Assembly: GCA_002269645.1 (NCBI GenBank)
Contig: NIVC01000838.1
Span: 248,001 to 312,000, forward strand
Source of the DNA: Macrostomum lignano
Lineage: Eukaryota
Reading direction: 5' to 3'
DNA length: 64,000 bases
A program made the translations under genes and the position numbers. Numbering within the stretch: position 1 is the first letter of the stretch; each line of letters starts with the position of its first letter. Positions 8,011 through 57,810 of this stretch are shown piece by piece. Below the pieces are notes generated by a model. The model did not search any database, was not told where the DNA came from, and saw nothing but the letters and a program-made list of their open reading frames with translations.

Positions 8011-10449
8011 TCAATCGTCCACCTGCAGCAGTCGGCAAGCGGCTGACGCAGCAGGTGCAGCCGTCCCGGTAAGCGGCCGGCCGCAGCCGAACGCCCGCCC
8101 GAACTCGGGCAGAATCGCCATCAGGCGAGCCCGGCTGGCCATGGAGAGGCCCGTGCCGGTATCCGTTGTCTCTAGCCCCGGCGCCGACCGATGGCAGGCC
8201 AGCAGCTGCCCCACCGTCAGCAGGAAGTCGCGGTCGAAGTCGATCTCCTTCTTGCTGTCAGCAGCGGCTGGTGGCCGCAGAGCAGCCAGGGCCAAACTGG
8301 CCGACCGCAGCTGCCGGTCCGCCGCTGTCCGCCTCGCCGACGACTCCGCCGGCAGGCCGAAGCCGCTGCGATTGGTGGCTGCGGCGCAGCGGATTACCGT
8401 CAGCGACTCCAGCTGAGGCTGCCGCGCCAGCAAGTCGTGGGCGGTGAGGAAGGCCAAGGCGGCCGGGCGCAGCGCCAGGGCGTTCACCGCCAGCGGGAAC
8501 CGCAGGCCCGGGGTCGCCAGCTCGGCCAGCAGGGCCGGCGCCGGCCCCAGGCCTCCGTCGACGTCCCCAGTCGAGCTGCCGCCGCGGTAAAAGGCAGACC
8601 CGAGACCAACAATGCGACGGTGCCTCAGGATGTTCAGCACAATGCCCAGGTAGCCGGCCTCCCGTCTGGCCTCCAGGCCACCGTAGGCGTTCGCCATTCG
8701 CAGCTCGGCCGCCTCGTCGGTCTCGCCGAACGCGTAGCCGTACCTGCCGCTGTCCAGAGCGCGCAGGAGGCCGCCCTTTGCCGCCAGCTCGATGTCCGAG
8801 GCGCCGCGGATCGTGTCGGCCAGACGGGCCCGCAGGCCGGCCACAAGTCGGCGACGTCCCCGATGAAAAAGCGGCAACGCCGACGGCGACGGCATCAAGT
8901 CGAAGGCGACGCGCAGGCAGCGGCGTCCGATGGTCTCGGGCTGCGTCGGAGGCGGCGGCGGCCCCAGCGGCAGCGGTTGACGTCGGCTGAGCAGCTCGCG
9001 CTGGCCGGGCTGGTTGAAGAACTCCGCTAGGCCGACGGAGAAACGCTCGAGGCCGGCCAGGGCGTTGACGAAGGCGTAGCCGGCCAGGCTGTCCGGGTCC
9101 AGGTTGGCCGTGAGGCGCAGCACCCGCCGCAGGGTGTCCGGTCGCCGTACCCGCAGCCTGCGGTATCGCCCGCTCGCCCAGCCAGGAAAAGCGGCCGAGC
9201 GGAAGGCCGCCCAGCCGGCCGAGCCAGCCGGAAACAGCCCGGCCACCTCGTCCAGGCTCAGCAGCTGCGGCGGCTCCTCTGGGGCGTCAACGACCGCCAG
9301 CAGCCTCGCCAGGCTGACGTGGTAGCGCCCGACCGCCTCGGCGATGAGCTGCGGCACCCCGCGGCCCAGCAGGTCGGTGAAGGCCGCCTTGACGAGCCCG
9401 GCCACGGAGGCCGCGTCGCTGCCCGGTGCGATGTTTGACAGCCGCGGCTCCAGCAGCCAGTTGAGGACGTCCGCCTCTGCCTCCGCGTTCGCAGTCTGCG
9501 CGGCTGTCGCTGGTTCTGGGCGCAGTTCCACGGCAAAGCCGAGCCCGTTGCCTACCAGGCGGCCCAGCGTGGCCTCCCAGCTGTCGTTGCCGCCGGCCCA
9601 GCCGAGGCTGCGACGGCTGAAGAACGACATCGGCGGCAGCAGGCGTCGGCGAATGTTGTGGTCCCGTTCGGCCAGCAGGTCGAGCAGTTCGTCGCGAGGG
9701 AAATCAGCGCCGGCTCTGGCGCAGGCCCGGGTCAGGTTGGTGACGGCCGACTGCCAGGCCGGCGCGGCCGGGCCCTGCGGCCCGTGGAACAGCCGCTCCA
9801 CCAGCGCGTCTTCGATGGCCTCCTGCGTGTCGGACAGGCGAGTCCTGGACGATTCGAGTCGCCCGGAGGCCGCCTGCCAGCGCAGCGGGTGGCTCGCCGA
9901 GTAGCCAGAGCAGGCCCTGGCGTAGAAGTCGCCGGTGCAGGGATCGTCGGTGTTGTCGCCAAACGATGTCGCCTCGCCGCTGCCGCCGCTACCGTCGGCG
10001 CCGTCGCAGCCGAGAAACTGGGCTCGGTGCGGCAGCCGGAGCCCGGACTGGAACCGCAGGTCCAGGCAATAAAGCAGCCCAAGCACCAGCAGGGCGACTG
10101 CGAAGCCGGCCAGCAGGACGGCCAGAGCGATTGACGTGGCCGAGCAGCCGCTGCTTCGGCTTCCTCGGTGGCCACCACCACCGGCGCCGACGTCGCCATC
10201 GTGATAGTCATCAGCGAGGCGCACCTTCAGAGTTGCTCCGTCAGAAGTTTGAGCATCGGCGTATTCTTCAGAGGCTGTGGAGCCGGCTGTTGTGGGAGTC
10301 ATTGTGGTTGTTGCCGTGGTCGCTGCTGTCTGCGTCTTGTCGGCGGAATGAGCAGCCGCAGCCGCCGCCGCTGTTGAGACCAGAAGTAACGGAGCTTCCG
10401 ATGAAGCAGCGGATGCTGGGTTACTATTGGTGGGCGACGTCTCTTTCAT
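8011..10449 (-). CDS. Neprilysin/ECE-like (peptidase M13) type II membrane protein, intronless, apparently catalytically inactive
   Basis: 812-aa ATG ORF with an N-terminal cytoplasmic tail and TM helix IALAVLLAGFAVALLVLGLLYCL. It has the M13 signature DPCTGDFYARACSGY and C-terminal FLLTVGQLLAC and LPEFGRAFGC...C matching the conserved M13 C-terminus. There is no HExxH (AHDLLA in its place) and no GENIAD (RTAAD). Confidence 0.8.
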   Translation of the reverse strand: MKETSPTNSNPASAASSEAPLLLVSTAAAAAAAHSADKTQTAATTATTTMTPTTAGSTASEEYADAQTSDGATLKVRLADDYHDGDVGAGGGGHRGSRSSGCSATSIALAVLLAGFAVALLVLGLLYCLDLRFQSGLRLPHRAQFLGCDGADGSGGSGEATSFGDNTDDPCTGDFYARACSGYSASHPLRWQAASGRLESSRTRLSDTQEAIEDALVERLFHGPQGPAAPAWQSAVTNLTRACARAGADFPRDELLDLLAERDHNIRRRLLPPMSFFSRRSLGWAGGNDSWEATLGRLVGNGLGFAVELRPEPATAAQTANAEAEADVLNWLLEPRLSNIAPGSDAASVAGLVKAAFTDLLGRGVPQLIAEAVGRYHVSLARLLAVVDAPEEPPQLLSLDEVAGLFPAGSAGWAAFRSAAFPGWASGRYRRLRVRRPDTLRRVLRLTANLDPDSLAGYAFVNALAGLERFSVGLAEFFNQPGQRELLSRRQPLPLGPPPPPTQPETIGRRCLRVAFDLMPSPSALPLFHRGRRRLVAGLRARLADTIRGASDIELAAKGGLLRALDSGRYGYAFGETDEAAELRMANAYGGLEARREAGYLGIVLNILRHRRIVGLGSAFYRGGSSTGDVDGGLGPAPALLAELATPGLRFPLAVNALALRPAALAFLTAHDLLARQPQLESLTVIRCAAATNRSGFGLPAESSARRTAADRQLRSASLALAALRPPAAADSKKEIDFDRDFLLTVGQLLACHRSAPGLETTDTGTGLSMASRARLMAILPEFGRAFGCGRPLTGTAAPAASAACRLLQVDD

Positions 10450-13832: not shown

Positions 13833-14033
13833 NNNNNNNNNNNNNNNNNNNNNNNNNNNNNNNNNNNNNNNNNNNNNNNNNNNNNNNNNNNNNNNNNNNN
13901 NNNNNNNNNNNNNNNNNNNNNNNNNNNNNNNNNNNNNNNNNNNNNNNNNNNNNNNNNNNNNNNNNNNNNNNNNNNNNNNNNNNNNNNNNNNNNNNNNNNN
14001 NNNNNNNNNNNNNCGGATGCGGCATCGGCAGCA
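13833..14033. other. Assembly gap (201 N)
   Basis: Run of N characters. Confidence 1.
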
Positions 14034-40653: not shown

Positions 40654-43099
40654 ATGTCATTCTCCATCTCCAGCTTCGTGGCCAAACGCCGCCGGCTCCA
40701 CCAGGCTCGCACAATCTGCCAGCAGAGTTTCGACAGGAGGCTGCGCTGCGCAATTTGCGGCGATAAAATCCGTCGCTGGTGCCAACGCGAGGAGACGCTG
40801 TGCCATCCGTTGAGCTGCTACGATCACCCGTGCCACTCGCACTGCATGCTGTCGATCTTGGGCGCTGACCAGCCGATGGGCAGCCAGCAGGTGTGCCCGG
40901 GCGCCGGCTGCAGTCGCCAGTTTAGCCAGCTGTGCTTTCACCGGTCCTGGTGGGGCCGATCGTCTGGACAGCGAAGCGTCAACAACTTGCCATCTGGTGA
41001 CAACGACGCCGTCGATGGCGGCGATCAGCTGGTCGACCAAACTACAGACGAGCTCCATGAAGCCGCCGCCGCTGCCGCCGACGGAGACAGCAGCAGCAGC
41101 AGCAGCGGAGGCTTTTCATTTAGAAATTTTCGGCGATTTTTTCCCGTCTTGGTGAGCTCCCGGGGTTGGTGCGGATAGGACGAGAAGATATTGGCAGCAG
41201 TTTAAGGTTATGACCTCGGTCACCACGGCAAATCAAACCGTGGCTGTTTTCATGGTAAATTATGCTCGTATTCCGCTAGCTGAGGTCATCACCCTATATC
41301 TGAACAATGGTAGCTGAGGTCATGACCCTATACCCGAACAATGGTAGCTGAGGTCATGACCCTATACCCGAACAATGGCAGCTGAGGTCATCACCCTACG
41401 AGCGTATACTCGAACAATGGTAGCTGATGTCATGACCCTATGATTAACAATGGCAACTGAGGTTATGACCCTATGATTAACAATGGCAACTGAGGTCATG
41501 ACCCTATGATTAACAATCGCAACTGAGGTTATGACCCTATGATTAACAATCGCAACTGAGGTTATGACCCTATGATTAACAATCGCAACTGAGGTCATGA
41601 CCCTATGATTAACAATCGCAACTGAGGTTATGACCCCATGATTAACAATGGCAACTGAGGTCATGACCCCATGATTAACAATGGCAACTGAGGTTATGAC
41701 CCTATGATTAACAATGGCAACTGAGGTCATGACCCTATGATTAACAATGGCAACTGAGGTCATGACCCTATGATTAACAATCGCAACTGAGGTCATGACC
41801 CTATGATTAACAATCGCAACTGAGGTTATGACCCTATGATTAACAATGGCAACTGAGGTCATGACCCTATGATTAACAATCGCAACTGAGGTTATGACCC
41901 CATGATTAACAATGGCAACTGAGGTTATGACCCTATGATTAACAATGGCAACTGAGGTCATGACCCTATGATTAACAATCGCAACTGAGGTCATGACCCT
42001 ATGATTAACAATCGCAACTGAGGTTATGACCCTATGATTAACAATGGCAACTGAGGTCATGACCCTATGATTAACAATCGCAACTGAGGTCATGACCCTA
42101 TGATTAACAATCGCAACTGAGGTCATGACCCTATGATTAACAATTGCAACTGAGGTCATGACCCTATGATTAACAATCGCAACTGAGGTCATGACCCTAT
42201 GATTAACAATCGCAACTGAGGTCATATATTCAAGCAGAAGAATCTGGGATCTGGAGTTTCCTACATCTTTTTCACAAGATCGAACTGGTTTAACCGCAGC
42301 TGCCGCCATCCCGCTCCCTACAATGCAGATCTCATCAAGCAAGCGCCAGAAGCGGCAGCAACAGGAGCAGGAGCAGCGGGTGTCAGACGAGCAAGCCGCC
42401 GAACAGGAGCCAATGGAACTGTCGCTCAACAGTCTGGAAGCTGAGTGCGCCATCTGCTGTTGCGGCATCGACACTGAAGCCGGCGTGCCAAATGGTTGCT
42501 GTCACAGCTTCTGTTTCGACTGCCTGAAGGAATGGGTGGTCAACAATGCCAGCTGCCCGATGGACCGGCGGCCGGTGAACTTTATCTACAAGCGCCAGCC
42601 AGGCTCGCAGGCCTTCACTGGGCGGCACCGGGTGTTCCTGCGGAACAGTCGCGACGCCTGCCAGGGCGGCTACTGCGGCCCGTTGGAGTCGCCGCCTGGG
42701 GAGCCGCACTTCTCTGAGCCTGGCGGCGGCGGCGGCGGCTGGTTCAGTTCGGCCAGACTCGAACCCAGCGCCCCTCCGGCCTCCAGCTTTGACAATAACG
42801 ACAGAAGCAACAATGCCAACGCGAATGCCTCGGCGGCTAGAAGCGGCGGAGATGTATCAGCGCTGTTCGCGTTCGTAGCAGCCGTACTGTTGGCCATTGT
42901 CATCTTCGCGTTCTTCCGCAGATACGGAGCTTCGCCGAATCCGGTGCCGACTCCTGCTCCGCCACCGGCTGCCGAATCCGGTAGCTCAGTAGCCAATCTG
43001 ATTCAGTTTGTTGTCCTAGTGGTGGTGCTGTACCTCACCGCCCAGCTCTGCCTGACGAGTAGTCAGACTAATACTAGAGCAGTGCCGGGTCGGGCTTGA
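40654..43099 (+). CDS. Putative membrane-anchored tandem-RING E3 ubiquitin ligase-like protein (exons 40654-41151 and 42329-43099, about 422 aa)
   Basis: Exon A begins CAG|ATG and has CAIC-x19-C-x2-H-x2-H-x2-C-x16-CPGAGC (RING-H2-like); its donor TTG|GTGAGC is phase 0. Exon B begins TGCAG|ATC in frame and has CAIC...CCHSFCFDCLKEW...CPMDR (C3HC3D RING) and two hydrophobic helices (ALFAFVAAVLLAIVIFAFF; LIQFVVLVVVLYLTAQLCL). The exon joining is inferred. Confidence 0.75.
41275..42225. repeat. 33-bp intronic minisatellite (CTGAGGTCATGACCCTATGATTAACAATCGCAA)
   Basis: About 28 copies. Confidence 0.95.
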
Positions 43100-43354
43100 G
43101 GGGACGACTGTTGGCTGCGATAATTCCACTTCCGTAATGAATATGGCCCTTGTAGCTAGTTCCTGCTGTTCCTGCTGTCCTGCTGCGTGTTGTCTGGGCG
43201 GGAGTTTTAATTATATAATCTCATTATTCTCTCTGATCTCAAGTAGTAATTGATGACATTCACAAGTTTGAAATTTTTCATTCGTATGTACACGCATCTG
43301 AATTATTGCGTGATTGTGATTTACAATTGTTGAATCCCAGAATTCTAACCCACA

Positions 43355-44785
43355 GTCTGAGAACCCCGAATCCTTAAATCCCAACCCTGATCCTAAATCC
43401 CAGAATGCTGATCCCAAATCCTTGAATCCTGATCCCGAATCCTTGAATCCCAACCCCGATCCCGGAATCCTGATCCCAAATTCCAGAATCCTGATTCCAA
43501 ATCCCGGAATCCTGATTAACTGATTCCCAATCCCAAAATCCTGATCCCAAATCCCAGAATCCTGATTCCAAATCTCGAAATCCTAATTGACTGATTCCCA
43601 ATCCCAGAATCCGGATCCCAAATCCCAGAATCCTGATCCCAAATCCTTGAATCCTGATCCCAAATCCTTGAATCCTGATCCCAAATCCTTGAATCTTGAA
43701 CCCAAATCCCGGAATCCTGATCCCTGATCCCAAATCCTTGAATCTTGAACCAAAATCCCGGAATCCTGATTCCAAATCCCGGAATCCTGAATGACTGATT
43801 CCCAATCCCAGAATCCTGATCCCAAATCCCAGAATCCTGATTAACAAATCCCGGAATCCGGAATGACTGATTCCCAATCCCAGAATCCTGATCCCGGAAT
43901 CCTGATCCCAGAATCCTGATCCCAGAATCCTGATCCCAGAATCCTGATCCCAGAATCCTGATCCCAAATCCCAGAATCCTGATTCCAAATCCCGGAATCC
44001 TGATTGACTGATTCCTAATCCCAGAATCCTGATCCCAAATCCCAGAATCCTGATCCCAAATCCTTGAATCTTGAACCAAAATCCCGGAATCCTGATTCCA
44101 AATCCCGGAATCCTGAATGACTGATTCCCAATCCCAGAATCCTGATCCCAAATCCCAGAATCCTGATTAACAAATCCCGGAATCCGGAATGACTGATTCC
44201 CAATCCCAGAATCCTGATCCCGGAATCCTGATCCCAGAATCCTGATCCCAGAATCCTGATCCCAGAATCCTGATCCCAGAATCCTGATCCCAGAATCCTG
44301 ATCCCAAATCCCAGAATCCTGATTCCAAATCCCGGAATCCTGATTGACTGATTCCTAATCCCAGAATCCTGATCCCAAATCCCAGAATCCTGATCCCAAA
44401 TCCCAGAATCCTGATCCCAAATCCCAGAATCCTGATCCCAAATCCTTGAATCTTGAACCCAAATCCCGGAATCCTAATTCCAAATCCCGGAATCCTGAAT
44501 GACTGATTCCCAATCCCAGAATCCTGATCCCAAATCCCAGAATCCTGATCCCAAATCCCAGAATCCTGATCCTAAATCCTTGAATCTTGAACCCAAATCC
44601 TTAAATATTGATCCCAAATCCTTGAATCTTGATCCCAAATCCTTGAATCCTGATCCCAAATCCCAGAATCCTGATCCCAAATCCCAAAATCATGATCCCT
44701 TATCCCAGAATCCTGATCCCAAATCCCAGAATCCTGATCCAGCATGCATGCCAAAATCTAGACCCCGAACTCGTGAAATTACTTT
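43355..44785. repeat. 7-bp-based complex minisatellite (AATCCCA / GAATCCT / GATCCCA)
   Basis: About 1.4 kb with internal higher-order duplications. Confidence 0.9.
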
Positions 44786-45374
44786 CTCAGACACGTCAGT
44801 CTGTAATGCATATCCCCAATCCGGATCAGAGTATGTTTATTCCGACCAAGAATGTTTATTTTGATAGCCTAGATAATTATTTCGTGAGTTTTTAGAATTT
44901 TACTATTCCATACCATTTGCCTTGTGTTAGCAAGTGGTTTCTCCATTAACAGTATAATTATAGAATGTTAATTGCCTTTCAATTTCCTTTTTTAACGATA
45001 GCGGTACCGTATGCGGCTTAAAAAACGCAACAACATGTGTGCCTACTTTTGCGTTAAAAATTTATGAAACGATTTTAATGCTAGTGTATTTTCGCTATCT
45101 TTATTACTCGTAAAAGTAAAAAATGTAGTTATTGCTTCAAAATACTACTTACGAGTACACAATGATTGTAAACACAGAAGTTGTTTGGAAGGAAAATATA
45201 TTTGACAAGAAAACTGCCTATTTTTTAAGCATTCAAAGAAAACGTCGCCAAAACGCTATTAAGATGGATTTTACGTAGTTTTTGGGAATTGTACTTTCGA
45301 TTTTTGTGGGAGTTACAATTCAACTATTCGCTGAGAATTAGGCTGGCGGCACAAGTCAAAATCGAGGTACATTG

Positions 45375-45930
45375 AGCGAGGCAGAGTGGCTTGAATTAGT
45401 AGGGCAGGAGGCAAAATTGATGTACATTGGGCGAGGTGGGGTGGCTTGAACTGGCGGGGCAGAAAGAGCCAAAATTGATGTACATTGGGCGAGGTGGGGT
45501 GGCTTGAACTGGCGGGACAGAGAGCCAAAATTGATGTACATTGAGCGAGGTGGGTGGCTTGAACTGGAGGGGCAGAGAGCGCCACAATCGATGTACATTG
45601 GGCGAGGTGGGGTGGCTTGGACTGGCGGGGCAGAGAGCCAAAATTGATGTACATTGGGCGAGGTGGGGTGGCTTGAACTGGCTGGGCAGAGAGCCAAAAT
45701 TGATGTACATTGGGCGAGGTGGGGTGGCTTGAACTGGCGGGGCAGAAAGAGCCAAAATTGATGTCCATTGGGCGAGGTGGGGTGGCTTGAACTGGCGGGA
45801 CAGAGAGCCAAAATTGATGTACATTGAGCGAGGTGGGTGGCTTGAACTGGAGGGGCAGAGAGCGCCACAATCGATGTACATTGGGCGAGGTGGGGTGGCT
45901 TGGACTGGCGGGGCAGAGAGCGTCACAATC
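45375..45930. repeat. ~56-bp minisatellite, about 10 copies
   Basis: Unit GCAGAGAGCCAAAATTGATGTACATTGGGCGAGGTGGGGTGGCTTGAACTGGCGGG. Confidence 0.9.
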
Positions 45931-46290
45931 GATGAGCATTCAGCTAAAATAAACAAAAAATATTTTGTTTCGTAATGGTTTCGAGATTGGCAATCAACAG
46001 AATTAATTACGAGCTATTATATTCTTGCCCCCGAAATTTTCCCAGCGAGCGCATAAAAATACATTGCATGCTTTTTCCTCTCCCTCTTAATCTGCTCTAA
46101 GCTCGTAACATTAGATTCGCAGCCTCTTTGGATCTTGGAACCTGGTTTCCCCGATTCTCGTTTCCGCGAGATGCTCCCAAACAGACTATTTGTGCATCCG
46201 CAGTAAGCCAGTCAGTCTCCAAGGAACCAATGGCAAACCGATTTTGGCTTCTTGCGCAGCTGCCCACCCACCCCCTGCCAGTAACGAGCC

Positions 46291-46297
46291 TATAAAA
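46291..46297 (+). promoter_or_regulatory. Candidate TATA box of peptide precursor 1
   Basis: CCTATAAAAT upstream of a putative 5' UTR intron (GTAAGA 46394 to TTGCAG 46469). Confidence 0.6.
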
Positions 46298-46497
46298 TGG
46301 AACGCTTCATCTCTGGCAGCTGGAAGTGCCCGCCTCCACAATCTAACTATATTCCCTGATCGCTGCAGTGAAGCAAGGTACTAAGCAATAAAGGTAAGAG
46401 TAAGCAATGTACTATTGCAGTATGTAAGCAGCACGAGTGAGATGATGCCGATTCCAAACCCCGTTGCAGACTCATCAACTTCGACCAAACACTGGCA

Positions 46498-46791
46498 ATG
46501 TCCCCGATCTTGCTAGCCATCCTGCTGATTGCGGCTGTGTCCTCGGCGTCGGCGATGCCACCGCATAACCGCCGGCGGGAGAACTTGTCGGACGAGCTCA
46601 TGAAGTTTGCGACGGCGGCGGCCGCTGCTGCTGCTGGCCCGCCGGACGCCTTGGACGAGCTGGTGGAGCCGCTGGCCGCCGCTGAAGGTGAACCTCGCCA
46701 TCGTGGCAGCCGGTTGTCACCGTTCTTGAGCAAGAGGCACAGTCTGCAGTCGATTCTGTACAAGCTGGGCCACTTCAAAAGTGGCAAATGA
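46498..46791 (+). CDS. Secreted peptide (neuropeptide-like) precursor 1, 97 aa
   Basis: Signal peptide MSPILLAILLIAAVSSASA, basic sites RRR and KR, and C-terminal HSLQSILYKLGHFKS followed by GK-stop (amidation signal). GC-rich codon usage. Confidence 0.85.
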   Translation: MSPILLAILLIAAVSSASAMPPHNRRRENLSDELMKFATAAAAAAAGPPDALDELVEPLAAAEGEPRHRGSRLSPFLSKRHSLQSILYKLGHFKSGK

Positions 46792-47004
46792 TGGCCCAAT
46801 GGCCTTCAGCAGCTGACTAGACAAGCACAGACTCCATGCGATTGAAACATTCGAAAATATATATTTTTTTTAAATCGAAAGTTTGCTGTGGTACATCTTT
46901 GTGACTTTCGATTTTTAAATTACACTCGTCTTTTATGATGTAATTGTTTGATTTACGAGAGTAATATCAAGAAATGGGTTACTTTATGATAACTACTGAG
47001 TGTG

Positions 47005-47632
47005 GAGGGCTCACTGTAGCTTCAGAAAGTCGCAGTGGGCGTCACTGAAGCATCAGGAAGTCGCAGTGGAGGTCACTGAAGCATCAGAAAGTCGCAGTGG
47101 ATGGATCACTGAAGCATCAGGGAATCAAAATGGGGTCACTGAAGCATCAGAAAGTCGCAGTGGGGGTCACTGAGCACCAGGGAATCAAAATGGGGTCACT
47201 GAAGCACCAGGAAATCAAAATGGGGTCACTGAAGCATCAGAAAGTCGCAGTGGGGGTCACTGAGCACCAGGGAATCAAAATGGGGTCACTGAAGCACCAG
47301 GAAATCAAAATGGGGTCACTGAAGCATCAGGAAATCAAAATGGGGTCACTGAAGCACCAGGAAATCAAAATGGGGTCACTGAAGCATCAGGAAATCAAAA
47401 TGGGGTCACTGAAGCATCAGAAAGTCGCAGTGGGGTCACTGAAGCATCAGAAAGCCGCACTGGGGGTCACTGAAGCATCAGAAAGCCGCACTGGGGGTCA
47501 CTGAAGCATCAGAAAGCCGCACTGGGGGGTCACTGAAGCATCAGAAAGCCGCACTGGGGGTCACTGAAGCATCAGAAAGCCGCACTGGGGGGTCACTGAA
47601 GCATCAGAAAGCCGCAGTAAGAGGTTACTGAA
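47005..47632. repeat. ~30-bp minisatellite (GGGGTCACTGAAGCATCAG + GAAATCAAAAT or AAAG[T/C]CGCA[G/C]T) between the two peptide genes
   Basis: About 20 tandem copies of two variant types. Confidence 0.9.
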
Positions 47633-48664
47633 GCGTTGGAGGCGGTAGCGACAAAATTATTATCCGAGGTAAAATCCATAAATTTTGCTGCCGACGCTGA
47701 ATTTAAAATTATTTTTAGACGCGAGACAATTCCCTCGCGCTGATATGCGATCCCGTGGATCCGCAGAAATTGAGACAGCTACGCCCCAGAACATGACTCT
47801 GCCCCGTGTCTTAATGAAGATTGTTGCCAACCCCCCTGCCAGAAAACAATTAGCAGTCCGATTTAATCAGTGTTGGATTTCAGGCGTCTCAGAATTTTAA
47901 TAATTCGAGTAATTGGAGTTTATCTCACCTGCTGGGAGACACAACAGGTGAGCGCGTGGGAGGACAGCTCCATTCTTATTCGTCCACTGTTCCTTCGGCC
48001 TCCACGAAATCAATTTATTACATGCGAAGCTTTTCTCATCTTTCCTGATTTTTGTTTTAACATTTAACTGTTTCCCTACTGCTGTACTGCATCCAGGAGG
48101 CGATGGCATGGTGATCTGGGTGTGTAGTATCGGCGGCACTGCTGTGGAGACGTTCCTGTGGTTCCTGATGGGGTGAAGATCACGGCGATTACGGTTGCTC
48201 AAATACTAACTTATTTTTTAAATCATTATGCATTCTCATGTGACTCATGTGATGGAAATTCGGAGAGTGATTCCAGTCGACATGGGAATGAAATTCGGAG
48301 AGTGATTCCAGTCGACAATGAAGAATGAAAAGTGAGCCATTAAATTTCTCAGGGCAGTCGAGCTCTATCAGATTGCTATTTCTGTGAGTTCTAAAATTAG
48401 CTGCATAGTTGATGCAGCCAATCATGAGATCTGAGGAGCTGTTCGACATCTCAACTATCAATATTTAAAGCAAACTCACCCAGCTTAAATATTCTCTTAA
48501 GGCCCTCAAAAAATCTCCACACTAAAAACTGGGAGACTTCGAAATCCGGTAAGTTGGCTTCGAGATTCCCCCCCCCCAGAGTTTTTCATACTTTTGAAGC
48601 AGGCTCAAACTCGGATGCACTGATTCCGTTCCAGAGCTTCATCAAGAACCAAGCAACAAGCACA

Positions 48665-48946
48665 ATGGCTGCCTCTCTCTCGTTGAAGCCGACAGCTCTG
48701 CTGCTGCTGGTACTGCTTTCGGTGGCATCGGGAGCCAACTCTGCTGACAACCCTCTGGAGGGGCTGGTGAATTTCTGCCGTCAAATCTGCGAACAGGAGC
48801 GGCTGTCAGCTGACAGCCTTTGGCAGCCTCAGCCTCAGCCGAGGCCAGTGAGCCTCAGCCGGAGAACGCCGAGTCTTCAAGCCATCTTCTACAAGCTGGG
48901 CCATCCGCCGGAATCCAGCAAGGACAAGAAGCAGCAATTCTTCTGA
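48665..48946 (+). CDS. Secreted peptide (neuropeptide-like) precursor 2, 93 aa, paralog of precursor 1
   Basis: ATG at 48665, signal peptide MAASLSLKPTALLLLVLLSVASG, LS-RR cleavage site, then TPSLQAIFYKLGHPPESSKDKKQQFF. Putative 5' UTR intron GTAAGT 48549 to TTCCAG 48634, TATTTAAA at 48462 and AATAAA at 49032. Confidence 0.85.
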   Translation: MAASLSLKPTALLLLVLLSVASGANSADNPLEGLVNFCRQICEQERLSADSLWQPQPQPRPVSLSRRTPSLQAIFYKLGHPPESSKDKKQQFF

Positions 48947-49360
48947 TTTCTGCCTCAGAACTTCGACTTTTGATTTAGATTGTTTTGGCAGTCGAATCGT
49001 AGAACTTGGATTTTTTGAAGAACAAAATTTAAATAAAAGCCCCATCGGCGGGAGAAGGTGGCTGACTGTTACGAATCGCATGGTTCCAACGACTTATATT
49101 CATTTTTATTGACAAAAGTTCCAATTACTCTACTGATCAGTAGTCAGTTAATGCCGCTATTCTTCAAGTAATAATTTTGAATACTTGGAATAATAGATGA
49201 ATGCCAGCATATTTCAGTAAAAGCTGCTACACCGAATAATTTGCAACGCGAAGAAGATTCAATCTGTTCTGCATCGCTCAGCCTCACAAGCAAATATTCT
49301 AATAGAGTATTGCCTACTTTAGGACGCTTGTGTCATAACTGAGAATTATGACAATCATAC

Positions 49361-50578
49361 CGCTTCCGCTCCCGCTTCCGCTCCGCTTCCGCTCCCGCTT
49401 CCGCTCCCGCTTCCGCTCCCGCTTCCGCTCCCGCTTCCGCTCCCGCTTCCGCTCCCGCTTCCGCTCCCGCTTCCGCTCCCGCTTCCGCTCCCGCTTCCGC
49501 TCCCGCTTCCGCTCCCGCTTCCGCTCCCGCTTCCGCTCCCGCTTCCGCTCCCGCTTCCGCTCCCGCTTCCGCTCCCGCTTCCGCTCCCGCTTCCGCTCCC
49601 GCTTCCGCTCCCGCTTCCGCTCCCGCTTCCGCTCCCGCTTCCGCTCCCGCTTCCGCTCCCGCTTCCGCTCCCGCTTCCGCTCCCGCTTCCGCTCCCGCTT
49701 CCGCTCCCGCTTCCGCTCCCGCTTCCGCTCCCGCTTCCGCTCCCGCTTCCGCTCCCGCTTCCGCTCCCGCTTCCGCTCCCGCTTCCGCTCCCGCTTCCGC
49801 TCCCGCTTCCGCTCCCGCTTCCGCTCCCGCTTCCGCTCCCGCTTCCGCTCCCGCTTCCGCTCCCGCTTCCGCTCCGCTTCCGCTCTCGCTTCCGCTCTCG
49901 CTTCCGCTCTCGCTTCCGCTCTCGCTTCCGCTCTCGCTTCCGCTCTCGCTTCCGCTCTCGCTTCCGCTCTCGCTTCCGCTCTCGCTTCCGCTCTCGCTTC
50001 CGCTCTCGCTTCCGCTCTCGCTTCCGCTCTCGCTTCCGCTCTCGCTTCCGCTCTCGCTTCCGCTCTCGCTTCCGCTCTCGCTTCCGCTCTCGCTTCCGCT
50101 CTCGCTTCCGCTCTCGCTTCCGCTCTCGCTTCCGCTCTCGCTTCCGCTCTCGCTTCCGCTCTCGCTTCCGCTCTCGCTTCCGCTCTCGCTTCCGCTCTCG
50201 CTTCCGCTCTCGCTTCCGCTCTCGCTTCCGCTCTCATCTCCCTGTCTCTCATCTCCCTGTCTCTCATCTCCCTGTCTCTCATCTCCCTGTCTCTCATCTC
50301 CCTGTCTCTCATCTCCCTGTCTCTCATCTCCCTGTCTCTCATCTCCCTGTCTCTCATCTCCCTGTCTCTCATCTCCCTGTCTCTCATCTCCCTGTCTCTC
50401 ATCTCCCTGTCTCTCATCTCCCTGTCTCTCATCTCCCTGTCTCTCATCTCCCTGTCTCTCATCTCCCTGTCTCTCATCTCCCTGTCTCTCATCTCCCTGT
50501 CTCTCATCTCCCTGTCTCTCATCTCCCTGTCTCTCATCTCCCTGTCTCTCATCTCCCTGTCTCTCATCTCCCTGTCTC
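49361..50578. repeat. Compound satellite: (GCTTCCGCTCCC)n, then (GCTTCCGCTCTC)n, then (ATCTCCCTGTCTCTC)n
   Basis: Three near-perfect blocks with sharp switches at about 49875 and 50236. Confidence 0.95.
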
Positions 50579-52870: not shown

Positions 52871-55800
52871 CGCACGGGGCATATGTTGGGCCATACGCAT
52901 ACAACGGGACCCGCGCTGTTGGGCCAAAAAAAATGTTGGGACTGTCCCATCAAGTCCGTCCAACACTTCCAAAAAAGTTACAATAGCAGCTCAAAATAAT
53001 ACTCTATGGATTCAGCTCGACAGCCTCTTTTTGATGGTGCAACTCATTTTTAATAATTTTACTTTCTGAGTCCATAATTAAGCAAAAACTGGCGTCCCAA
53101 TAATGAAAAATGATACAAAATTCGACCAAATCACTATTGGGACACTGAAATGGCTAATCTGCTCCCGTATATTTTTATTGGTTTTTTCTCATATTTTTAC
53201 TAAAAGTAGATTTCAAGCGCATTCATTTGCTGCAGTCTTTGTTTCAAGACTTATATACATAGCATACATTAAATACACACATAGCAAAACATAGCAAAAT
53301 ACTTTTAAGGGTATTTTATTGTCAAAGGATGGTTCTGGATGGAGATAAACCTAAAGAAATGACAAGGGCTTACATGTACTTCTGACTGTGATGGGCATCA
53401 GTACTCTACACGAACTAAATTGTTAGGACAGTGTTGCAGTGTTGAATACAACAGCCCACTCTTGTTAGGACTCATGCTATTGACTGCTGCGCGCATTCGA
53501 TATTCTATAAATTGTTGGGACTGTGTGCTAGAGTGTCGTTTACAAAAGCCCACTCATATTAGGACTTACCCCGTACATGTTAGGACTAAGCCCTACCCCC
53601 TGTGTACATGGCTCCAATTTACCAGAGTCCCCTTGCTAGTTAAGTGTACATTTATTTTGGTCTATTATTGACGCCACCCCGCAAACGTACGGTAAAACTA
53701 AATTGGCATGTACTCGCTATGCTGAAATCAATGGTCAACTCTGCCTCTGCCATGGCACCCGAGTCACCATGGTATGGAAAGAACAGCATGGAATGGCACA
53801 GCGAGAAACATGTAAGTGGTATTAAAAAACTTTGTCGGAAACAAGAAGCATTTATATTTAAATGCTATAAAAATACTGCTCCTGCTAAGCAGTACCTACC
53901 TTTACTTCAGGTATATCACCTTTGATCAACTGCCATGTGGCGCAATTGCCAAAGGATCCGTCGACTTTAACCGGTAGGCTGTAAAAGCTTTGAGTAAAAT
54001 TTGACATTTCGTCTGAAATCCATTGACATTCAATAGCCTACGTGTCCAACCACAAAAATGATAAGTTTTGTACTTTTAACTCTCAGATCGGGTCTTAGCA
54101 GCTTCTATAGCTATGCATGCAAGGGCCCCTCAGAGGAGATGCTTAAACACTGCAGTGCATTTTTCCTAGCAATTATTGGGACACGAAGTGTTGGGCCACT
54201 GTGTGTGTGTGTCTAGTTTTTCCGCATTTGTTAAGTCACCTAAAGAACTCAGTTAATAAAGGGCTCCAGAACAAATTGATGGGCAAACGGATGACACACT
54301 GCACAGAGACTTGTTGGGACACATTAAAAACAGCTTATTTTAGAATGGGTACACTTTACTAAAGTAGAATGCTCCCACAGAAAGCTGCAAGCAAACTAGC
54401 ATCTTCTGGAGCTGACATGCAGAGAAGAATGATTTTGTCGTCCTTGAAATCACTAAACAGATATGCGAAATCGATCTTTTGCTAACCCCACCACAGGTTC
54501 CAGTGAAAAGAAGAAACGAAACCCATTGACTAAATTGGCAGTCGACTCAATCGATGCCGACTTCAACGGACCTGTCAGCTTCGAACTCAGGAGAGCAGCT
54601 AATAGTCTACGAGAGTAATGCTAGATGCCAGAATGCTTCACAGCATCAAAGTCTTTAAAGCAGAAGCTTCAATGAAAGGTTAGTTCATGCTGTGGCTGCA
54701 TTCGTTTTCGTGTCTAGAAGCGTTATAACTTTTTGTACTTTTAACTCTCAGATCGGGTCTTAGCAGATTCTATAGCTATGCATGCAAGGGCCCCTCAGAG
54801 GAGATGCTTAAACACTGCAGTGCATTTTTCCTAGCAATTATTGGGACACGAAGTGTTGGGCCACTGTGTGTGTGTGTCTAGTTTTTTCCGCATTTGTTAA
54901 GTCACCTAAAGAACTCAGTTAATAAAGGGCTCCAGAACAAATTGATGGGCAAATGGATGACACACTGCACAGAGACTTGTTGGGACACATTAAAAACAGC
55001 TTATTTTAGAATGGGTACACTTTACTAAAGTAGAATGCTCCCACAGAAAGCTGCAAGCAAACTAGCATCTTCTGGAGCTGACATGCAGAGAAGAATGATT
55101 TTGTCGTCCTTGAAATCACTAAACAGATATGCGAAATCGATCTTTTGCTAACCCCACCACAGGTTCCAGTGAAAAGAAGAAACGAAACCCATTGACTAAA
55201 TTGGCAGTCGACTCAATCGATGCCGCTGCAACGGACCTGTCAGCTTCGAACTCAGGAGAGCAGCTAATAGTCTACGAGAGTAATGCTAGATGCCAGAATG
55301 CTTCACAGCATCAAAGTTTTTAAAGAAGAAGCTTCAATGAAAGGTTAGTTCATGCTGTGGCTGCATTCGTTTTCGTGTCTAGAAGCGTTATAACTTTTTG
55401 TACTTTTAACTCTCAGATCGGGTCTTAGCAGATTCTATAGCTATGCATGCAAGGGCCCCTCAGAGGAGATGCTTAAACACTGCAGTGCATTTTTCCTAGC
55501 AATTATTGGGACACGAAGTGCTGGGCCACTGTGTGTGTGTGTCTAGTTTTTTCCGCATTTGTTAAGTCACCTAAAGAACTCAATTAATAAAGGGCTCCAG
55601 AACAAATTGATGGGCAAATGGATGACACACTGCACAGAGACTTGTTGGGACACATTAAAAACAGCTTATTTTAGAATGGGTACACTTTACTAAAGTAGAA
55701 TGCTCCACAGAAAGCTGCAAGCAAACTAGCATCTTCTGGAGCTGACATGCAGAGAAGAATGATTTTGTCGTCCTTGAAATCACTAAATAGATATGCGAAA

Positions 55801-57810
55801 TCGATCTTTTGCTAACCCACCACAGGTTCCAGTGAAAAGAAGAAACGAAACCCATTGACTAAATTGGCAGTCGACTCAATCGATGCCGCTGCAACGGACC
55901 TGTCAGCTTCGAACTCAGGAGAGCAGCTAATAGTCTACGAGAGTAATGCTAGATGCCAGAATGCTTCACAGCATCAAAGTCTTAAGCAGAAGCTTCAATG
56001 AAAGGTTAGTTCATGCTGTGGCTGCATTCGTTTTCGTGTCTAGAAGCGTTATAACTTTTTGTACTTTTAACTCTCAGATCGGGTCTTAGCAGATTCTATA
56101 GCTATGCATGCAAGGGCCCCTCAGAGGAGATGCTTAAACACTGCAGTGCATTTTTCCTAGCAATTATTGGGACACGAAGTGTTGGGCCACTGTGTGTGTG
56201 TGTCTAGTTTTTTCCGCATTTGTTAAGTCACCTAAAGAACTCAATTAATAAAGGGCTCCAGAACAAATTGATGGGCAAATGGATGACACACTGCACAGAG
56301 ACTTGTTGGGACACATTAAAAACAGCTTATTTTAGAATGGGTACACTTTACTAAAGTAGAATGCTCCACAGAAAGCTGCAAGCAAACTAGCATCTTCTGG
56401 AGCTGACATGCAGAGAAGAATGATTTTGTCGTCCTTGAAATCACTAAATAGATATGCGAAATCGATCTTTTGCTAACCCCACCACAGGTTCCAGTGAAAA
56501 GAAGAAACGAAACCCATTGACTAAATTGGCAGTCGACTCAATCGATGCCGCTGCAACGGACCTGTCAGCTTCGAACTCAGGAGAGCAGCTAATAGTCTAC
56601 GAGAGTAATGCTAGATGCCAGAATGCTTCACAGCATCAAAGTCTTAAGCAGAAGCTTCAATGAAAGGTTAGTTCATGCTGTGGCTGCATTCGTTTTCGTG
56701 TCTAGAAGCGTTATAACTTTTTGTACTTTTAACTCTCAGATCGGGTCTTAGCAGATTCTATAGCTATGCATGCAAGGGCCCCTCAGAGGAGATGCTTAAA
56801 CATTGCAGTGCATTTTTCCTAGCAATTATTGGGACACGAAGTGTTGGGCCACTGTGTGTGTGTGTAGTTTTTTTCCGCATTTGTTAAGTCACCTAAAGGA
56901 CTCAATTAATAAAGGGCTCCAGAACAAATTGATGGGCAAATGGATGACACACTGCACAGAGACTTGTTGGGACACATTAAAAACAGCTTATTTTAGAATG
57001 GGTACACTTTACTAAAGTAGAATGCTCCCACAGAAAGCTGCAAGCAAACTAGCATCTTCTGGAGCTGACATGCAGAGAAGAATGATTTTGTCGTCCTTGA
57101 AATCACTAAATAGATATGCGAAATCGATCTTTTGCTAATCCCACCACAGGTTCCAGTGAAAAGAAGAAACGAAACCCATTGACTAAATTGGCAGTCGACT
57201 CAATCGATGCCGACTGCAACGGACCTGTCAGCTTCGAACTCAGGAGAGCAGCTAATTTATAATCTGCAAGCGTAATGCTGGATGCCAGAGTGCTCTAAAT
57301 AACGAGACTCCTGTTTTCTTACTCGACCGGAATTTGTTGTTTAATCTGCTTAACTAATCTCTGCGTTTCAGTTTTTCAGTTTCACTGTCAATTTTAGGTT
57401 TTTTCCTAAGCGCAAGTGTAATTGAATTTTTTATTCATATTAGTCAGCCATATTGCGGACAGCATTATAGCGTATTAGTAAAGGTAAAGGTAAATAGACT
57501 GCTTATAACTAGTTTTTCCTTCATGTGGATTGGCTTTAACGAAACCTTTTGTATTTCAAGTAATGCTGAATTCGCTGGACTGAGGACAATATAGTTACAC
57601 GATGATATGCTATTCCTTCACTTTCAATAGAACATACTATTAGTATGGGGCGTGCTTTTTTATTTCAATGTATGCTTTTTTTCATCATTTAAATGCAAAA
57701 AATACTTAATAGGTCATTGCACTGTGTGTATGTGTGTGTTTTCGTGTGTCAAAAAAAATTGCAAAATAAGTGCCCACCATTGTATACCGTACCAACAAGT
57801 GCCCGGTGCG
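52871..57810. mobile_element. ~4.9-kb putative non-autonomous TIR element inserted in a (TG)n tract
   Basis: Left end CGCACGGGGCATATGTTGGGCCATACGCATACAACGGG resembles the reverse complement of the right end CGCACCGGGCACTTGTTGGTACGGTATACAATGGT. (TG)n lies on both sides in the same orientation, and TGTT[G/A]GG[A/C]C motifs recur inside. Confidence 0.55.
54062..57256. repeat. Tandem array of a ~663-bp unit, about 4.8 copies
   Basis: TGTACTTTTAACTCTCAGATCGGG recurs with its first G at 54070, 54735, 55400, 56061 and 56723. Confidence 0.95.

What the first reader, a model, noticed from the sequence alone, without database searches (positions are those of the whole stretch)
46498..48946. Tandem pair of paralogous secreted peptide precursors sharing an unfamiliar conserved core, SLQxIxYKLGH
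Seen: two short ORFs 1.9 kb apart on the same strand, each with a signal peptide, a spacer, LS+dibasic site (LSKR / LSRR) and a C-terminal peptide. The peptides are HSLQSILYKLGHFKS-GK* and TPSLQAIFYKLGHPPESSKDKK. Spacers are unalignable, but the 11-residue core (46741-46773; 48872-48904) is 9/11 identical with four synonymous third-position differences (CTG/CTT, CAG/CAA, ATT/ATC, CAC/CAT), which suggests purifying selection on the peptide. Established: KR/RR are prohormone convertase sites and C-terminal G-K is the PAM amidation signal, predicting HSLQSILYKLGHFKS-amide. Inference: this is a neuropeptide, hormone or secreted effector (pheromone, seminal or antimicrobial amphipathic peptide) family that I do not recognise as a named invertebrate family.
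Basis: partly seen in the sequence, partly recalled or inferred. Interest (0 to 1): 0.9.

Follow-up and report, generated by a model that had tools for sequence, protein, structure and literature searches.

The report
Orphan flatworm prohormone-like gene pair
Two neighbouring small genes of the flatworm Macrostomum lignano encode secreted precursors that share only a short peptide placed right after a hormone-type cleavage site, so they are probably an undescribed, lineage-restricted signalling-peptide family, but peptide processing, neuronal expression and conservation in other species are all untested.

Summary
The window is Macrostomum lignano contig NIVC01000838.1. ORF1 (46498-46791, 97 aa) and ORF2 (48665-48946, 93 aa) lie 1.87 kb apart on the + strand. 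Each has a signal-peptide-like N-terminus, an unalignable spacer, LS-KR or LS-RR, then SLQSILYKLGH or SLQAIFYKLGH.

Both are real coding genes:
- GenBank lists them as hypothetical proteins, from an RNA-seq-derived annotation.
- Their codon usage and GC3 match neighbouring genes, in the annotated frame only.
- Between genome copies, ORF1 shows 5 synonymous and 2 non-synonymous changes.
- In the shared core, synonymous sites are saturated (pS 0.78) while the protein is 9/11 identical.

No relative turned up outside M. lignano in 1.84 billion representative proteins, Pfam, PDB sequences or the searchable literature.

The best reading (about 0.5) is a taxonomically restricted neuropeptide or peptide-hormone precursor pair cut by a PC2-type convertase. 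The amidation signal (GK-stop) occurs only in ORF1, so it is not a family feature. A resemblance to spexin and galanin is not statistically supported. Cell type, peptide processing and conservation in other macrostomids could not be tested here. This is a reasonable candidate of a known kind and of moderate interest.

The parts
46498..46791 (+). ORF1 CDS (97 aa plus stop). It is a prohormone-like precursor; the near-identical copy on NIVC01000913.1 is named BOX15_Mlig016515g3.
   Evidence: Codon-usage LLR is +24.5 bits in this frame only and GC3 is 0.76. There are 5 synonymous and 2 non-synonymous changes against copy L003.
46498..46554 (+). ORF1 predicted signal peptide, MSPILLAILLIAAVSSASA (hydrophobic core, A-S-A before the cut).
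   Evidence: Read directly from the sequence, plus a heuristic hydrophobic-core and -3/-1 rule. No SignalP was available.
46732..46737 (+). ORF1 dibasic site Lys79-Arg80, preceded by conserved Leu-Ser.
46738..46782 (+). ORF1 predicted mature peptide HSLQSILYKLGHFKS. The conserved core SLQSILYKLGH is at 46741-46773.
46783..46791 (+). Gly96-Lys97-stop: the predicted amidation donor Gly plus a basic residue. Present in ORF1 only.
   Evidence: Sequence. Its role is inferred from established knowledge of PAM and carboxypeptidase E.
46468..46469 (+). Putative 3' splice (or trans-splice) acceptor AG, 28 nt upstream of the ORF1 ATG. Candidate donors are GT at 46378 and 46394.
   Evidence: Sequence. 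The same boundary is used by the ab initio model P0008. Inferred, with no transcript proof.
48504..48548 (+). ORF2 gene: the annotated part of the 5' exon. It is non-coding if translation starts at ATG 48665.
   Evidence: P0001 begins PQKISTLKTGRLRNP, which is the translation of 48504-48548.
48549..48634 (+). ORF2 gene: 86-nt GT...AG intron, ending 30 nt upstream of the ATG.
   Evidence: The join ...RNP|SFIKNQ in the RNA-seq-derived GenBank CDS P0001.
48665..48946 (+). ORF2 CDS (93 aa plus stop from the first ATG). It is a prohormone-like precursor, named BOX15_Mlig028219g2.
   Evidence: Codon-usage LLR is +18.4 bits in this frame only and GC3 is 0.69.
48665..48733 (+). ORF2 predicted signal peptide, MAASLSLKPTALLLLVLLSVASG.
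   Evidence: Sequence plus the heuristic.
48860..48865 (+). ORF2 dibasic site Arg66-Arg67, preceded by conserved Leu-Ser.
48866..48925 (+). ORF2 predicted peptide TPSLQAIFYKLGHPPESSKD. The conserved core SLQAIFYKLGH is at 48872-48904. It is followed by KK (48926-48931) and QQFF (48932-48943).
49032..49037 (+). AATAAA polyadenylation signal 86 nt after the ORF2 stop. For ORF1 only the variant AATATA is present, at 46856.

Best explanation
The locus carries two old tandem paralogues that encode small secreted precursors of a taxonomically restricted signalling peptide, most likely a neuropeptide or peptide hormone.

Proposed mechanism:
1. Each preproprotein enters the secretory pathway through its signal peptide.
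2. A PC2-type prohormone convertase cuts after the conserved LS-KR or LS-RR.
3. This releases a C-terminal peptide carrying the conserved core SLQ-x-I-x-YKLGH, which is the receptor-binding part.
4. In ORF1, carboxypeptidase removes the terminal Lys, and PHM/PAL converts the Gly to give HSLQSILYKLGHFKS-amide (monoisotopic mass 1755.98 Da).
5. In ORF2, cleavage at KK would give the non-amidated TPSLQAIFYKLGHPPESSKD.

Shown: the genes are real and coding, transcripts exist, and constraint is concentrated on the core. Inferred: signal-peptide cleavage, convertase processing, amidation, receptor signalling and neuronal expression.
For: - **Organism and annotation.** The window is M. lignano Mlig_3_7, and both ORFs are GenBank CDSs. 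That annotation was built from RNA-seq (StringTie/TACO/TBONE/TransDecoder; PMC5730564), so transcripts exist. The ORF2 model contains an 86-nt GT-AG intron.
- **Coding signal.** GC3 is 0.76 and 0.69, against 0.71-0.87 in neighbouring genes. Codon log-likelihood is +24.5 and +18.4 bits in the annotated frames; every other frame is negative except one antisense frame of ORF1, at +8.4 bits. GC falls to 0.34-0.37 right after the stops.
- **Selection.** ORF1 against its copy on NIVC01000913.1 gives pS 0.067 and pN 0.009, with binomial p = 0.015. Core against core gives pS 0.78 (saturated) and pN 0.079. At the DNA level, the core is the only detectable similarity between the two genes.
- **Architecture.** Each has a signal-peptide-like N-terminus, a spacer, then a conserved LS plus dibasic site immediately before the conserved block near the C-terminus. 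The P4 residue is Leu, not Arg, so the site is PC1/3- or PC2-like rather than furin-like.
- **Processing enzyme.** M. lignano has a PC2 homologue that is expressed in the nervous system and is essential (PMC4490696).
- **Pattern of conservation.** The mature peptide is conserved while the prepro region has diverged. That pattern is expected for receptor ligands and is the reverse of host-defence peptide families.
Against: - No expression site is known. The gene IDs were absent from the text-held supplements of five M. lignano papers.
- There is no peptidomic evidence.
- No homologue was found in any other species.
- The amidation signal is not shared by ORF2.
- The conserved block is short, and its statistical support is moderate once multiple testing is allowed for.
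- One genome copy (L001) has a 1-bp deletion inside the ORF2 core. This is either an assembly indel or a disabled copy.
- The AlphaFold model is uninformative (pLDDT 55.6).
Confidence: 0.5

Rival explanations
1. The genes encode secreted peptides or proteins made by non-neuronal gland cells. They would act as seminal-fluid allohormones, adhesive or mucus components, or defence peptides, released to the outside or into a mating partner rather than acting as internal neuro-endocrine signals.
For: - The same features fit this reading: signal peptide, small size, transcription and coding constraint.
- M. lignano is known for many fast-evolving, lineage-specific secreted reproductive proteins (PMC5977470 and PMC7336406, titles and abstracts).
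- No homologue exists outside the species.
- The ORF1 peptide would be cationic (+2 from Lys, plus the N-terminus and the amide).
Against: - Conservation is concentrated on a short peptide just after a dibasic site, with everything else free to diverge. That is typical of receptor ligands, not of structural gland products.
- The hydrophobic moment is not above shuffles (0.30 and 0.25, with 24% and 15% of shuffles at least as high), and the ORF2 peptide has net charge 0. This argues against a shared antimicrobial mechanism.
- The IDs are not in the seminal-fluid screen supplement. This is weak evidence, since that study largely uses other transcript IDs.
Confidence: 0.25
2. The peptides are highly divergent members of a known bilaterian family, most plausibly spexin/galanin/allatostatin-A. 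They would act on a galanin/AstA-type GPCR.
For: This rests on a resemblance recalled from memory. Spexin is NWTPQAMLYLKGAQ-amide and galanin is GWTLNSAGYLLGPH. The ORF2 peptide TPSLQAIFYKLGHP is in the same register after a dibasic site, with matches at Q5, A6, Y9 and G12 to spexin and at L4, Y9, L11 and G12 to galanin. The Y-x-L-G motif also recalls the Y-x-F-G-L of AstA. Ungapped scores of 19-20 were reached by 87 of 4000 shuffles for ORF1 and 112 of 4000 for ORF2.
Against: - A p of about 0.02-0.03 per comparison is not significant after mentally scanning dozens of families.
- Pfam, which holds Galanin, Spexin and Allatostatin models to my knowledge, gave no hit at E <= 10.
- PDB sequences, which include galanin chains to my knowledge, gave no galanin hit.
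- The hallmark Trp2 is absent (His or Pro instead).
- The peptide sits at the C-terminal end of the precursor, not the N-terminal end.
- Polyclad flatworms are reported to have an allatostatin-A/buccalin-type peptide (PMC13551398). The orthologous slot may therefore already be filled by a conventional peptide.
Confidence: 0.05
3. The shared core is a chance resemblance between two unrelated small ORFs, at least one of which is not a functional gene.
For: - The match is only 17 residues and 25 bits.
- 2 of 3000 shuffles reached it.
- The window is highly repetitive and full of spurious ORFs.
- No homologues exist elsewhere.
- One copy of ORF2 is frameshifted.
Against: - Both ORFs independently show coding-type codon usage in the right frame.
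- ORF1 shows an excess of synonymous change between copies.
- Both are in an RNA-seq-based annotation.
- The match is at the equivalent position after LS plus a dibasic site in two adjacent same-strand ORFs. These are among only 11 signal-peptide-like ORFs in the window.
Confidence: 0.08
4. The two ORFs are exons of one larger gene, as in the 1007-aa MetaClust model that fuses the upstream RING-finger gene, ORF1 and ORF2.
For: P0008 joins ...VVLVVVL|LINFDQTLAMSPILL...KLGHFK|TGSNSDALIPFQ|SFIKNQ...MAASLS.
Against: - The fused model contains two internal signal-peptide-like starts.
- It also fuses the RING-finger gene and further sequence upstream of it.
- It skips ORF1's in-frame GK-stop through a weak GTGGCA donor.
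- The RNA-seq-derived GenBank annotation gives three separate genes with different transcript-cluster names.
Confidence: 0.03

Closest known systems
Flatworm neuropeptide and prohormone precursors discovered by architecture (planarian spp/npp genes of Collins et al. 2010; npp families of McVeigh 2009 and Koziol 2016)
   Same: Both are small preproproteins with a signal peptide. The bioactive peptide is flanked by dibasic sites. A C-terminal Gly-basic amidation signal is present (ORF1). Conservation is limited to the mature peptide. The host has a PC2-dependent processing pathway.
   Different: The motif SLQxIxYKLGH was not found in the main text of Collins et al. or anywhere in the searchable library. 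There is one peptide copy per precursor. The second paralogue is not amidated. The McVeigh and Koziol catalogues could not be read, so prior listing under an npp number cannot be excluded.
Spexin / galanin (vertebrate) and allatostatin-A / buccalin (protostome) peptides
   Same: The peptide starts right after a dibasic site. There is a central aromatic Tyr followed by x-L-G. Length is about 14-20 residues. ORF1 is amidated, as spexin is.
   Different: Trp2 is absent. There is no Pfam hit. Similarity is at chance level once multiple comparisons are counted. YKLGH is internal rather than a C-terminal FGL-amide. There is a single copy rather than the multi-copy AstA or buccalin precursors. The peptide sits at the C-terminus of the precursor.
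Amphibian temporin / dermaseptin-type host-defence peptide precursors
   Same: The layout is signal peptide, spacer, KR, then a short peptide ending in GK-stop. This is the same as in ORF1.
   Different: In those families the prepro region is conserved and the mature peptide is hypervariable, whereas here it is the reverse. The peptides are not significantly amphipathic, and ORF2's peptide is uncharged. There is no sequence relationship.

Membership tests
Neuropeptide / peptide-hormone precursor (generic class) | N-terminal signal peptide | tested here: met
   There is an 11-residue uncharged hydrophobic core, with small residues at -3/-1 (ASA|M and ASG|A). Only 11 ATG-ORFs in the window pass this heuristic. 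SignalP was not available.
Neuropeptide / peptide-hormone precursor (generic class) | Conserved peptide bounded by dibasic convertase sites | tested here: met
   LS-KR|H and LS-RR|T lie immediately upstream of the core in both proteins. ORF2 also has KK downstream.
Neuropeptide / peptide-hormone precursor (generic class) | Sequence constraint concentrated on the mature peptide, not on the spacer | tested here: met
   In the core, pN is 0.079 against a saturated pS of 0.78. There is no other protein or DNA similarity between the two genes.
Neuropeptide / peptide-hormone precursor (generic class) | C-terminal Gly amidation signal | tested here: inconclusive
   Present in ORF1 (…FKS-G-K-stop) and absent in ORF2 (…SSKD-KK-QQFF).
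Neuropeptide / peptide-hormone precursor (generic class) | Expression in neurons or endocrine cells, and detection of the processed peptide | not testable with these tools
   The gene IDs are absent from the held supplements of five papers. No expression or peptidomic resource is reachable.
Neuropeptide / peptide-hormone precursor (generic class) | Conservation of the peptide in related species | tested here: inconclusive
   No hit outside M. lignano in 5.8 billion clusters or 1.84 billion representatives. However, those collections appear to hold no other macrostomid proteomes, and a motif of 11-17 aa cannot reach significance at that database size.
Galanin / spexin | N-terminal x-W-T motif (Trp2) and a match to the family profile | tested here: not met
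   Position 2 is Ser (ORF1) or Pro (ORF2); aligned by the Tyr, it is His or Pro. Pfam gave no hit at E <= 10. No galanin chain appeared among PDB hits. Shuffle p is 0.02-0.12.
Allatostatin-A / buccalin | Multiple copies of a peptide ending in Y/F-x-F-G-L-amide (or G-G-L-amide) | tested here: not met
   There is a single core per precursor. Y-K-L-G-H is internal and is not followed by Gly plus a basic residue. Pfam gave no hit.
Cationic amphipathic host-defence peptides | Net positive charge and a significant helical hydrophobic moment shared by family members | tested here: not met
   muH is 0.30 and 0.25, reached by 24% and 15% of shuffles. The ORF2 peptide has K+R-D-E = 0.
Described flatworm npp/spp families | Match of the mature-peptide motif to a catalogued family | tested here: inconclusive
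   The motif is not in any searchable full text or in Collins et al. 2010. The McVeigh 2009 and Koziol 2016 catalogues are not held.

The most novel reading that the evidence does not exclude
The SLQxIxYKLGH peptides would be the flatworm representatives of the spexin/galanin lineage. They sit in the same register after the cleavage site and share Q/A/Y/L/G positions. This would show that a galanin/spexin-like ligand form, rather than only the FGL-amide/buccalin form, exists in a protostome. It would give a direct handle on the unresolved ligand homology between galanin and allatostatin-A systems.
Probability: 0.04. Interest if true: 0.7.

Novelty: new member of a known kind. Interest (0 to 1): 0.35.

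Why it matters
If these genes encode a real signalling peptide, they add an uncharacterised, apparently macrostomid-restricted ligand to the peptidergic repertoire of a regeneration and sexual-selection model. M. lignano offers transgenesis and RNAi, so the function and the receptor could be worked out directly. The pair also illustrates how ancient tandem paralogues can be recognised only from an 11-residue core once everything else has diverged. That is useful for mining orphan prohormones. On present evidence it is one more candidate prohormone among the many orphan secreted peptides in flatworms, not a new principle.

Tried and rejected
- **Homologue searches.**
  - The word-indexed searches with ORF1 and ORF2 returned only M. 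lignano's own proteins.
  - The exhaustive HMMER profile search of 1.84 billion representatives did the same.
- **Pfam.** Full precursors and C-terminal pieces gave nothing at E <= 10.
- **PDB sequence searches**. The only 'hits' were tandem protein-A domain constructs. Their score is the sum of repeated matches with per-domain E-values in the hundreds, so I rejected them as an artefact.
- **Literature.**
  - Motif strings gave nothing relevant.
  - Gene IDs in full text and in the supplements of PMC5816591, PMC7336406, PMC5730564, PMC12896417 and PMC5977470 gave no occurrences.
  - The motif was searched in the supplement of the polyclad larval atlas, with no occurrences.
  - A search for 'Ml-npp' style names gave nothing relevant.
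  - The Koziol 2016 and McVeigh 2009 catalogues are not held.
- **Copy-versus-copy dN/dS for ORF2.** The three copies are identical in ORF2 apart from the 1-bp deletion in L001, so this was uninformative.
- **Amphipathic-helix idea.** The hydrophobic moment is not above shuffles.
- **AlphaFold.** pLDDT was 55.6, with only a short, low-confidence helix over LQSILYK. I did not use it.
- **Rfam on the whole window.** No RNA family was found.
- **Chimeric 1007-aa model P0008.** Rejected as an ab initio fusion.
- **Resemblances recalled from memory.** Spexin, galanin, AstA, PDF and VIP are all at chance level after multiple testing.
Full report
**Where the window comes from.** An exact look-up of the ORF1 protein finds it on two contigs of assembly GCA_002269645.1. 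The ORF2 protein is 100% identical to GenBank 'hypothetical protein BOX15_Mlig028219g2 [Macrostomum lignano]'. Locus L002/L004, from contig NIVC01000838.1, is base-for-base identical to the window. The window is therefore part of the Mlig_3_7 genome of the free-living flatworm Macrostomum lignano. It is highly repetitive. Its other genes are unrelated to peptide signalling:
- an ADAM-like disintegrin/EGF exon (1383-2255);
- an 812-aa GC-rich ORF with weak similarity to the M13 peptidase N-terminal domain (8011-10449, minus strand);
- a papain-family protease on the minus strand (around 34.6-36.5 kb);
- a RING-finger gene just upstream (40654-43099).

**The observation.** ORF1 (46498-46791, 97 aa) and ORF2 (ATG at 48665, stop at 48946, 93 aa) lie 1,873 bp apart on the + strand.
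- Both start with a typical signal-peptide-like segment: MSPILLAILLIAAVSSASA|M and MAASLSLKPTALLLLVLLSVASG|A.
- Both spacers are unalignable.
- Both carry Leu-Ser plus a dibasic pair (K79-R80, R66-R67), followed after one or two residues by SLQSILYKLGH or SLQAIFYKLGH.
- ORF1 ends in G-K-stop. ORF2 continues PPESSKD-KK-QQFF-stop, so the amidation signal is not shared.

**Is the similarity more than chance?**
- BLASTP aligns 17 residues (12 identical), with E = 4e-5 for the single comparison.
- In my shuffle test, 2 of 3000 shuffles reached the observed score, and the Gumbel p was about 2e-4.
- This would not stand out in an all-against-all six-frame comparison of 64 kb. However, only 11 ATG-ORFs of 40 aa or more in the window have a signal-peptide-like start. 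The relevant number of comparisons is therefore about 55.
- The match is at the equivalent place in both proteins, directly after LS plus a dibasic site and near the C-terminus.
- The genes are neighbours on one strand.
- Each has an AG acceptor 28 nt (ORF1, inferred) or 30 nt (ORF2, annotated) upstream of its ATG.
- At the DNA level the only similarity between the two genes is the core itself: 78% over 32 nt, E = 0.003.
- No third copy exists in the window or the sister loci.

I take the paralogy as real and old.

**Are they genes?**
- The GenBank annotation of NIVC00000000 was produced from a genome-guided RNA-seq assembly. Transcript boundaries were set by trans-splicing and poly(A) data, and ORFs were called by TransDecoder (PMC5730564). 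The existence of both CDSs therefore implies transcripts.
- The ORF2 model (P0001) includes a spliced 5' exon. Its join ...GRLRNP|SFIKNQ... corresponds to an 86-nt GT-AG intron at 48549-48634.
- Composition agrees. GC3 is 0.76 and 0.69, against 0.71-0.87 in neighbouring genes.
- A codon-usage log-likelihood trained on those neighbours is +24.5 and +18.4 bits in the annotated frames. It is negative in every other frame except one antisense frame of ORF1, which scores +8.4 bits.
- GC drops to 0.34-0.37 immediately after each stop.
- AATAAA lies 86 nt after the ORF2 stop.

**Selection.** The assembly holds three copies of the pair: the window, L001 on NIVC01004569.1 and L003 on NIVC01000913.1. 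This fits the documented redundancy of the DV1 assembly.
- The copies are 0-2.4% divergent.
- ORF1 differs between the window and L003 at 7 sites, 5 synonymous and 2 replacement (L5S in the signal peptide, L52F in the spacer). This gives pS 0.067, pN 0.009 and binomial p = 0.015.
- Between the two paralogues, the core has pS 0.78 (saturated) and pN 0.079.
- The peptide sequence has therefore been held while everything else, including the synonymous sites inside it, has randomised.
- L001 has lost one C inside the ORF2 core (ATCTTCTAC becomes ATCTTTAC), which shifts the frame. This may be an assembly indel or a disabled redundant copy.

**Relatives elsewhere.** None was found.
- The word-indexed search of 5.8 billion clusters returned nothing for ORF1 and only M. 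lignano's own entries for ORF2.
- The exhaustive HMMER profile search of 1.84 billion representatives returned only those same two proteins.
- Pfam and PDB sequences gave no meaningful hit.
- Neither the motif nor the gene IDs occur in the searchable literature or in the supplements I could open.

Two caveats apply. The protein collections appear to hold no other macrostomid proteomes. A motif of 11-17 residues also cannot reach significance against billions of sequences. The result means 'not a recognisable member of any profiled family and not broadly conserved'. It does not mean 'absent from related species'.

**Mechanism.** The layout is the classical prohormone layout. The P4 residue at both sites is Leu rather than Arg, so the sites look like PC1/3- or PC2-type dibasic sites rather than furin sites. 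M. lignano has a PC2 homologue that is expressed in the nervous system and essential for post-embryonic development (PMC4490696). I therefore propose this sequence of events:
1. Signal-peptide removal.
2. Cleavage after KR or RR.
3. For ORF1, trimming of the terminal Lys and amidation of Ser95 from Gly96, giving HSLQSILYKLGHFKS-amide (1755.98 Da).
4. For ORF2, cleavage at KK, giving TPSLQAIFYKLGHPPESSKD.

The conserved core would be the receptor-contacting element. All of these steps are inferred.

The direction of conservation separates this reading from host-defence-type precursors with the same layout. Here the mature peptide is conserved and the prepro region is free to vary. The peptides are also not significantly amphipathic, and the ORF2 peptide has no net charge. 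AlphaFold gives only a low-confidence model (pLDDT 55.6).

**Comparison with known families.** The closest kind is the set of architecture-defined flatworm prohormones (spp/npp genes). Membership of any particular one could not be shown, and the two main catalogues were not readable.

From memory, the peptides resemble spexin (NWTPQAMLYLKGAQ-amide) and galanin (GWTLNSAGYLLGPH), in register after the cleavage site. Tested here, that resemblance is at chance level:
- shuffle p is 0.02-0.12 before correction for the many families considered;
- the hallmark Trp2 is missing;
- there is no Pfam or PDB galanin match.

A recent review reports an allatostatin-A/buccalin-type peptide in a polyclad flatworm (PMC13551398). 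I keep the spexin/galanin idea only as the low-probability novel reading.

**Verdict.** The locus most likely encodes two ancient paralogous precursors of an orphan, lineage-restricted signalling peptide. Whether it is neuronal, whether it is processed as predicted and whether it is conserved beyond M. lignano remain to be shown. It is a new member of a known kind and of moderate interest.

Noticed in passing
window 47007-47634: A minisatellite (30-nt unit, higher-order 90-nt period, about 20 copies) fills much of the spacer between the two genes. Its copy number differs among the three genome copies (122-314 gap columns in the alignment).
   Followed up: partly
L001 (NIVC01004569.1), about 7320-7330, equivalent to window 48884-48892: There is a one-base deletion (ATCTTCTAC becomes ATCTTTAC) inside the conserved core of ORF2 in one genome copy. 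It gives the frameshifted GenBank protein BOX15_Mlig028219g1 (P0002). It is either an assembly indel error or a disabled redundant copy.
   Followed up: partly
window 40654-48860 (protein P0008, MetaClust UPI0007A2EB98): A 1007-aa public gene model fuses antisense-looking sequence, the RING-finger gene, ORF1 and part of ORF2 into one protein. Because of it, the 97-aa ORF1 protein is clustered with RING-finger proteins in the 90% clusters, which hides ORF1 from representative-based searches.
   Followed up: yes
window 49360-50578: There are two abutting perfect microsatellite arrays: a 12-mer CCGCTTCCGCTC in 73 copies and a 15-mer CTCTCATCTCCCTGT in 23 copies, directly downstream of ORF2. The L001 copy carries a different repeat composition there.
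   Followed up: no
window 45357-45921: A 56-nt tandem repeat (10 copies, with a 283-nt higher-order unit) lies about 0.6 kb upstream of ORF1.
   Followed up: no
window 8011-10449 (minus strand): An intron-less 812-aa ORF with 70% GC (GC3 0.81) has only a weak, sub-threshold match to the Peptidase_M13_N domain (E = 0.004, 17 bits against a cut-off of 32). It may be a divergent neprilysin/ECE-like protein. Such enzymes degrade or process peptides, but no link to the finding was shown.
   Followed up: partly
window 46347-46799 (minus strand): A 150-codon open frame runs antisense to ORF1. It has a TTG start only and a codon-usage score of +8.4 bits against +24.5 for the sense frame. It looks like the usual by-product of a GC-rich coding region rather than a gene.
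   Followed up: partly
window 13833-14013: A run of 181 N (an assembly gap) sits between two copies of a large repeat-rich segment (about 11.2-13.0 kb and 14.1-16.0 kb) whose ORFs are 74-94% identical.
   Followed up: no
window 54463-54618, 55129-55323, 56454-56663, 57116-57262: Short ORFs that are 98-100% identical recur within 3 kb, which indicates a local segmental or dispersed repeat downstream of the gene pair.
   Followed up: no
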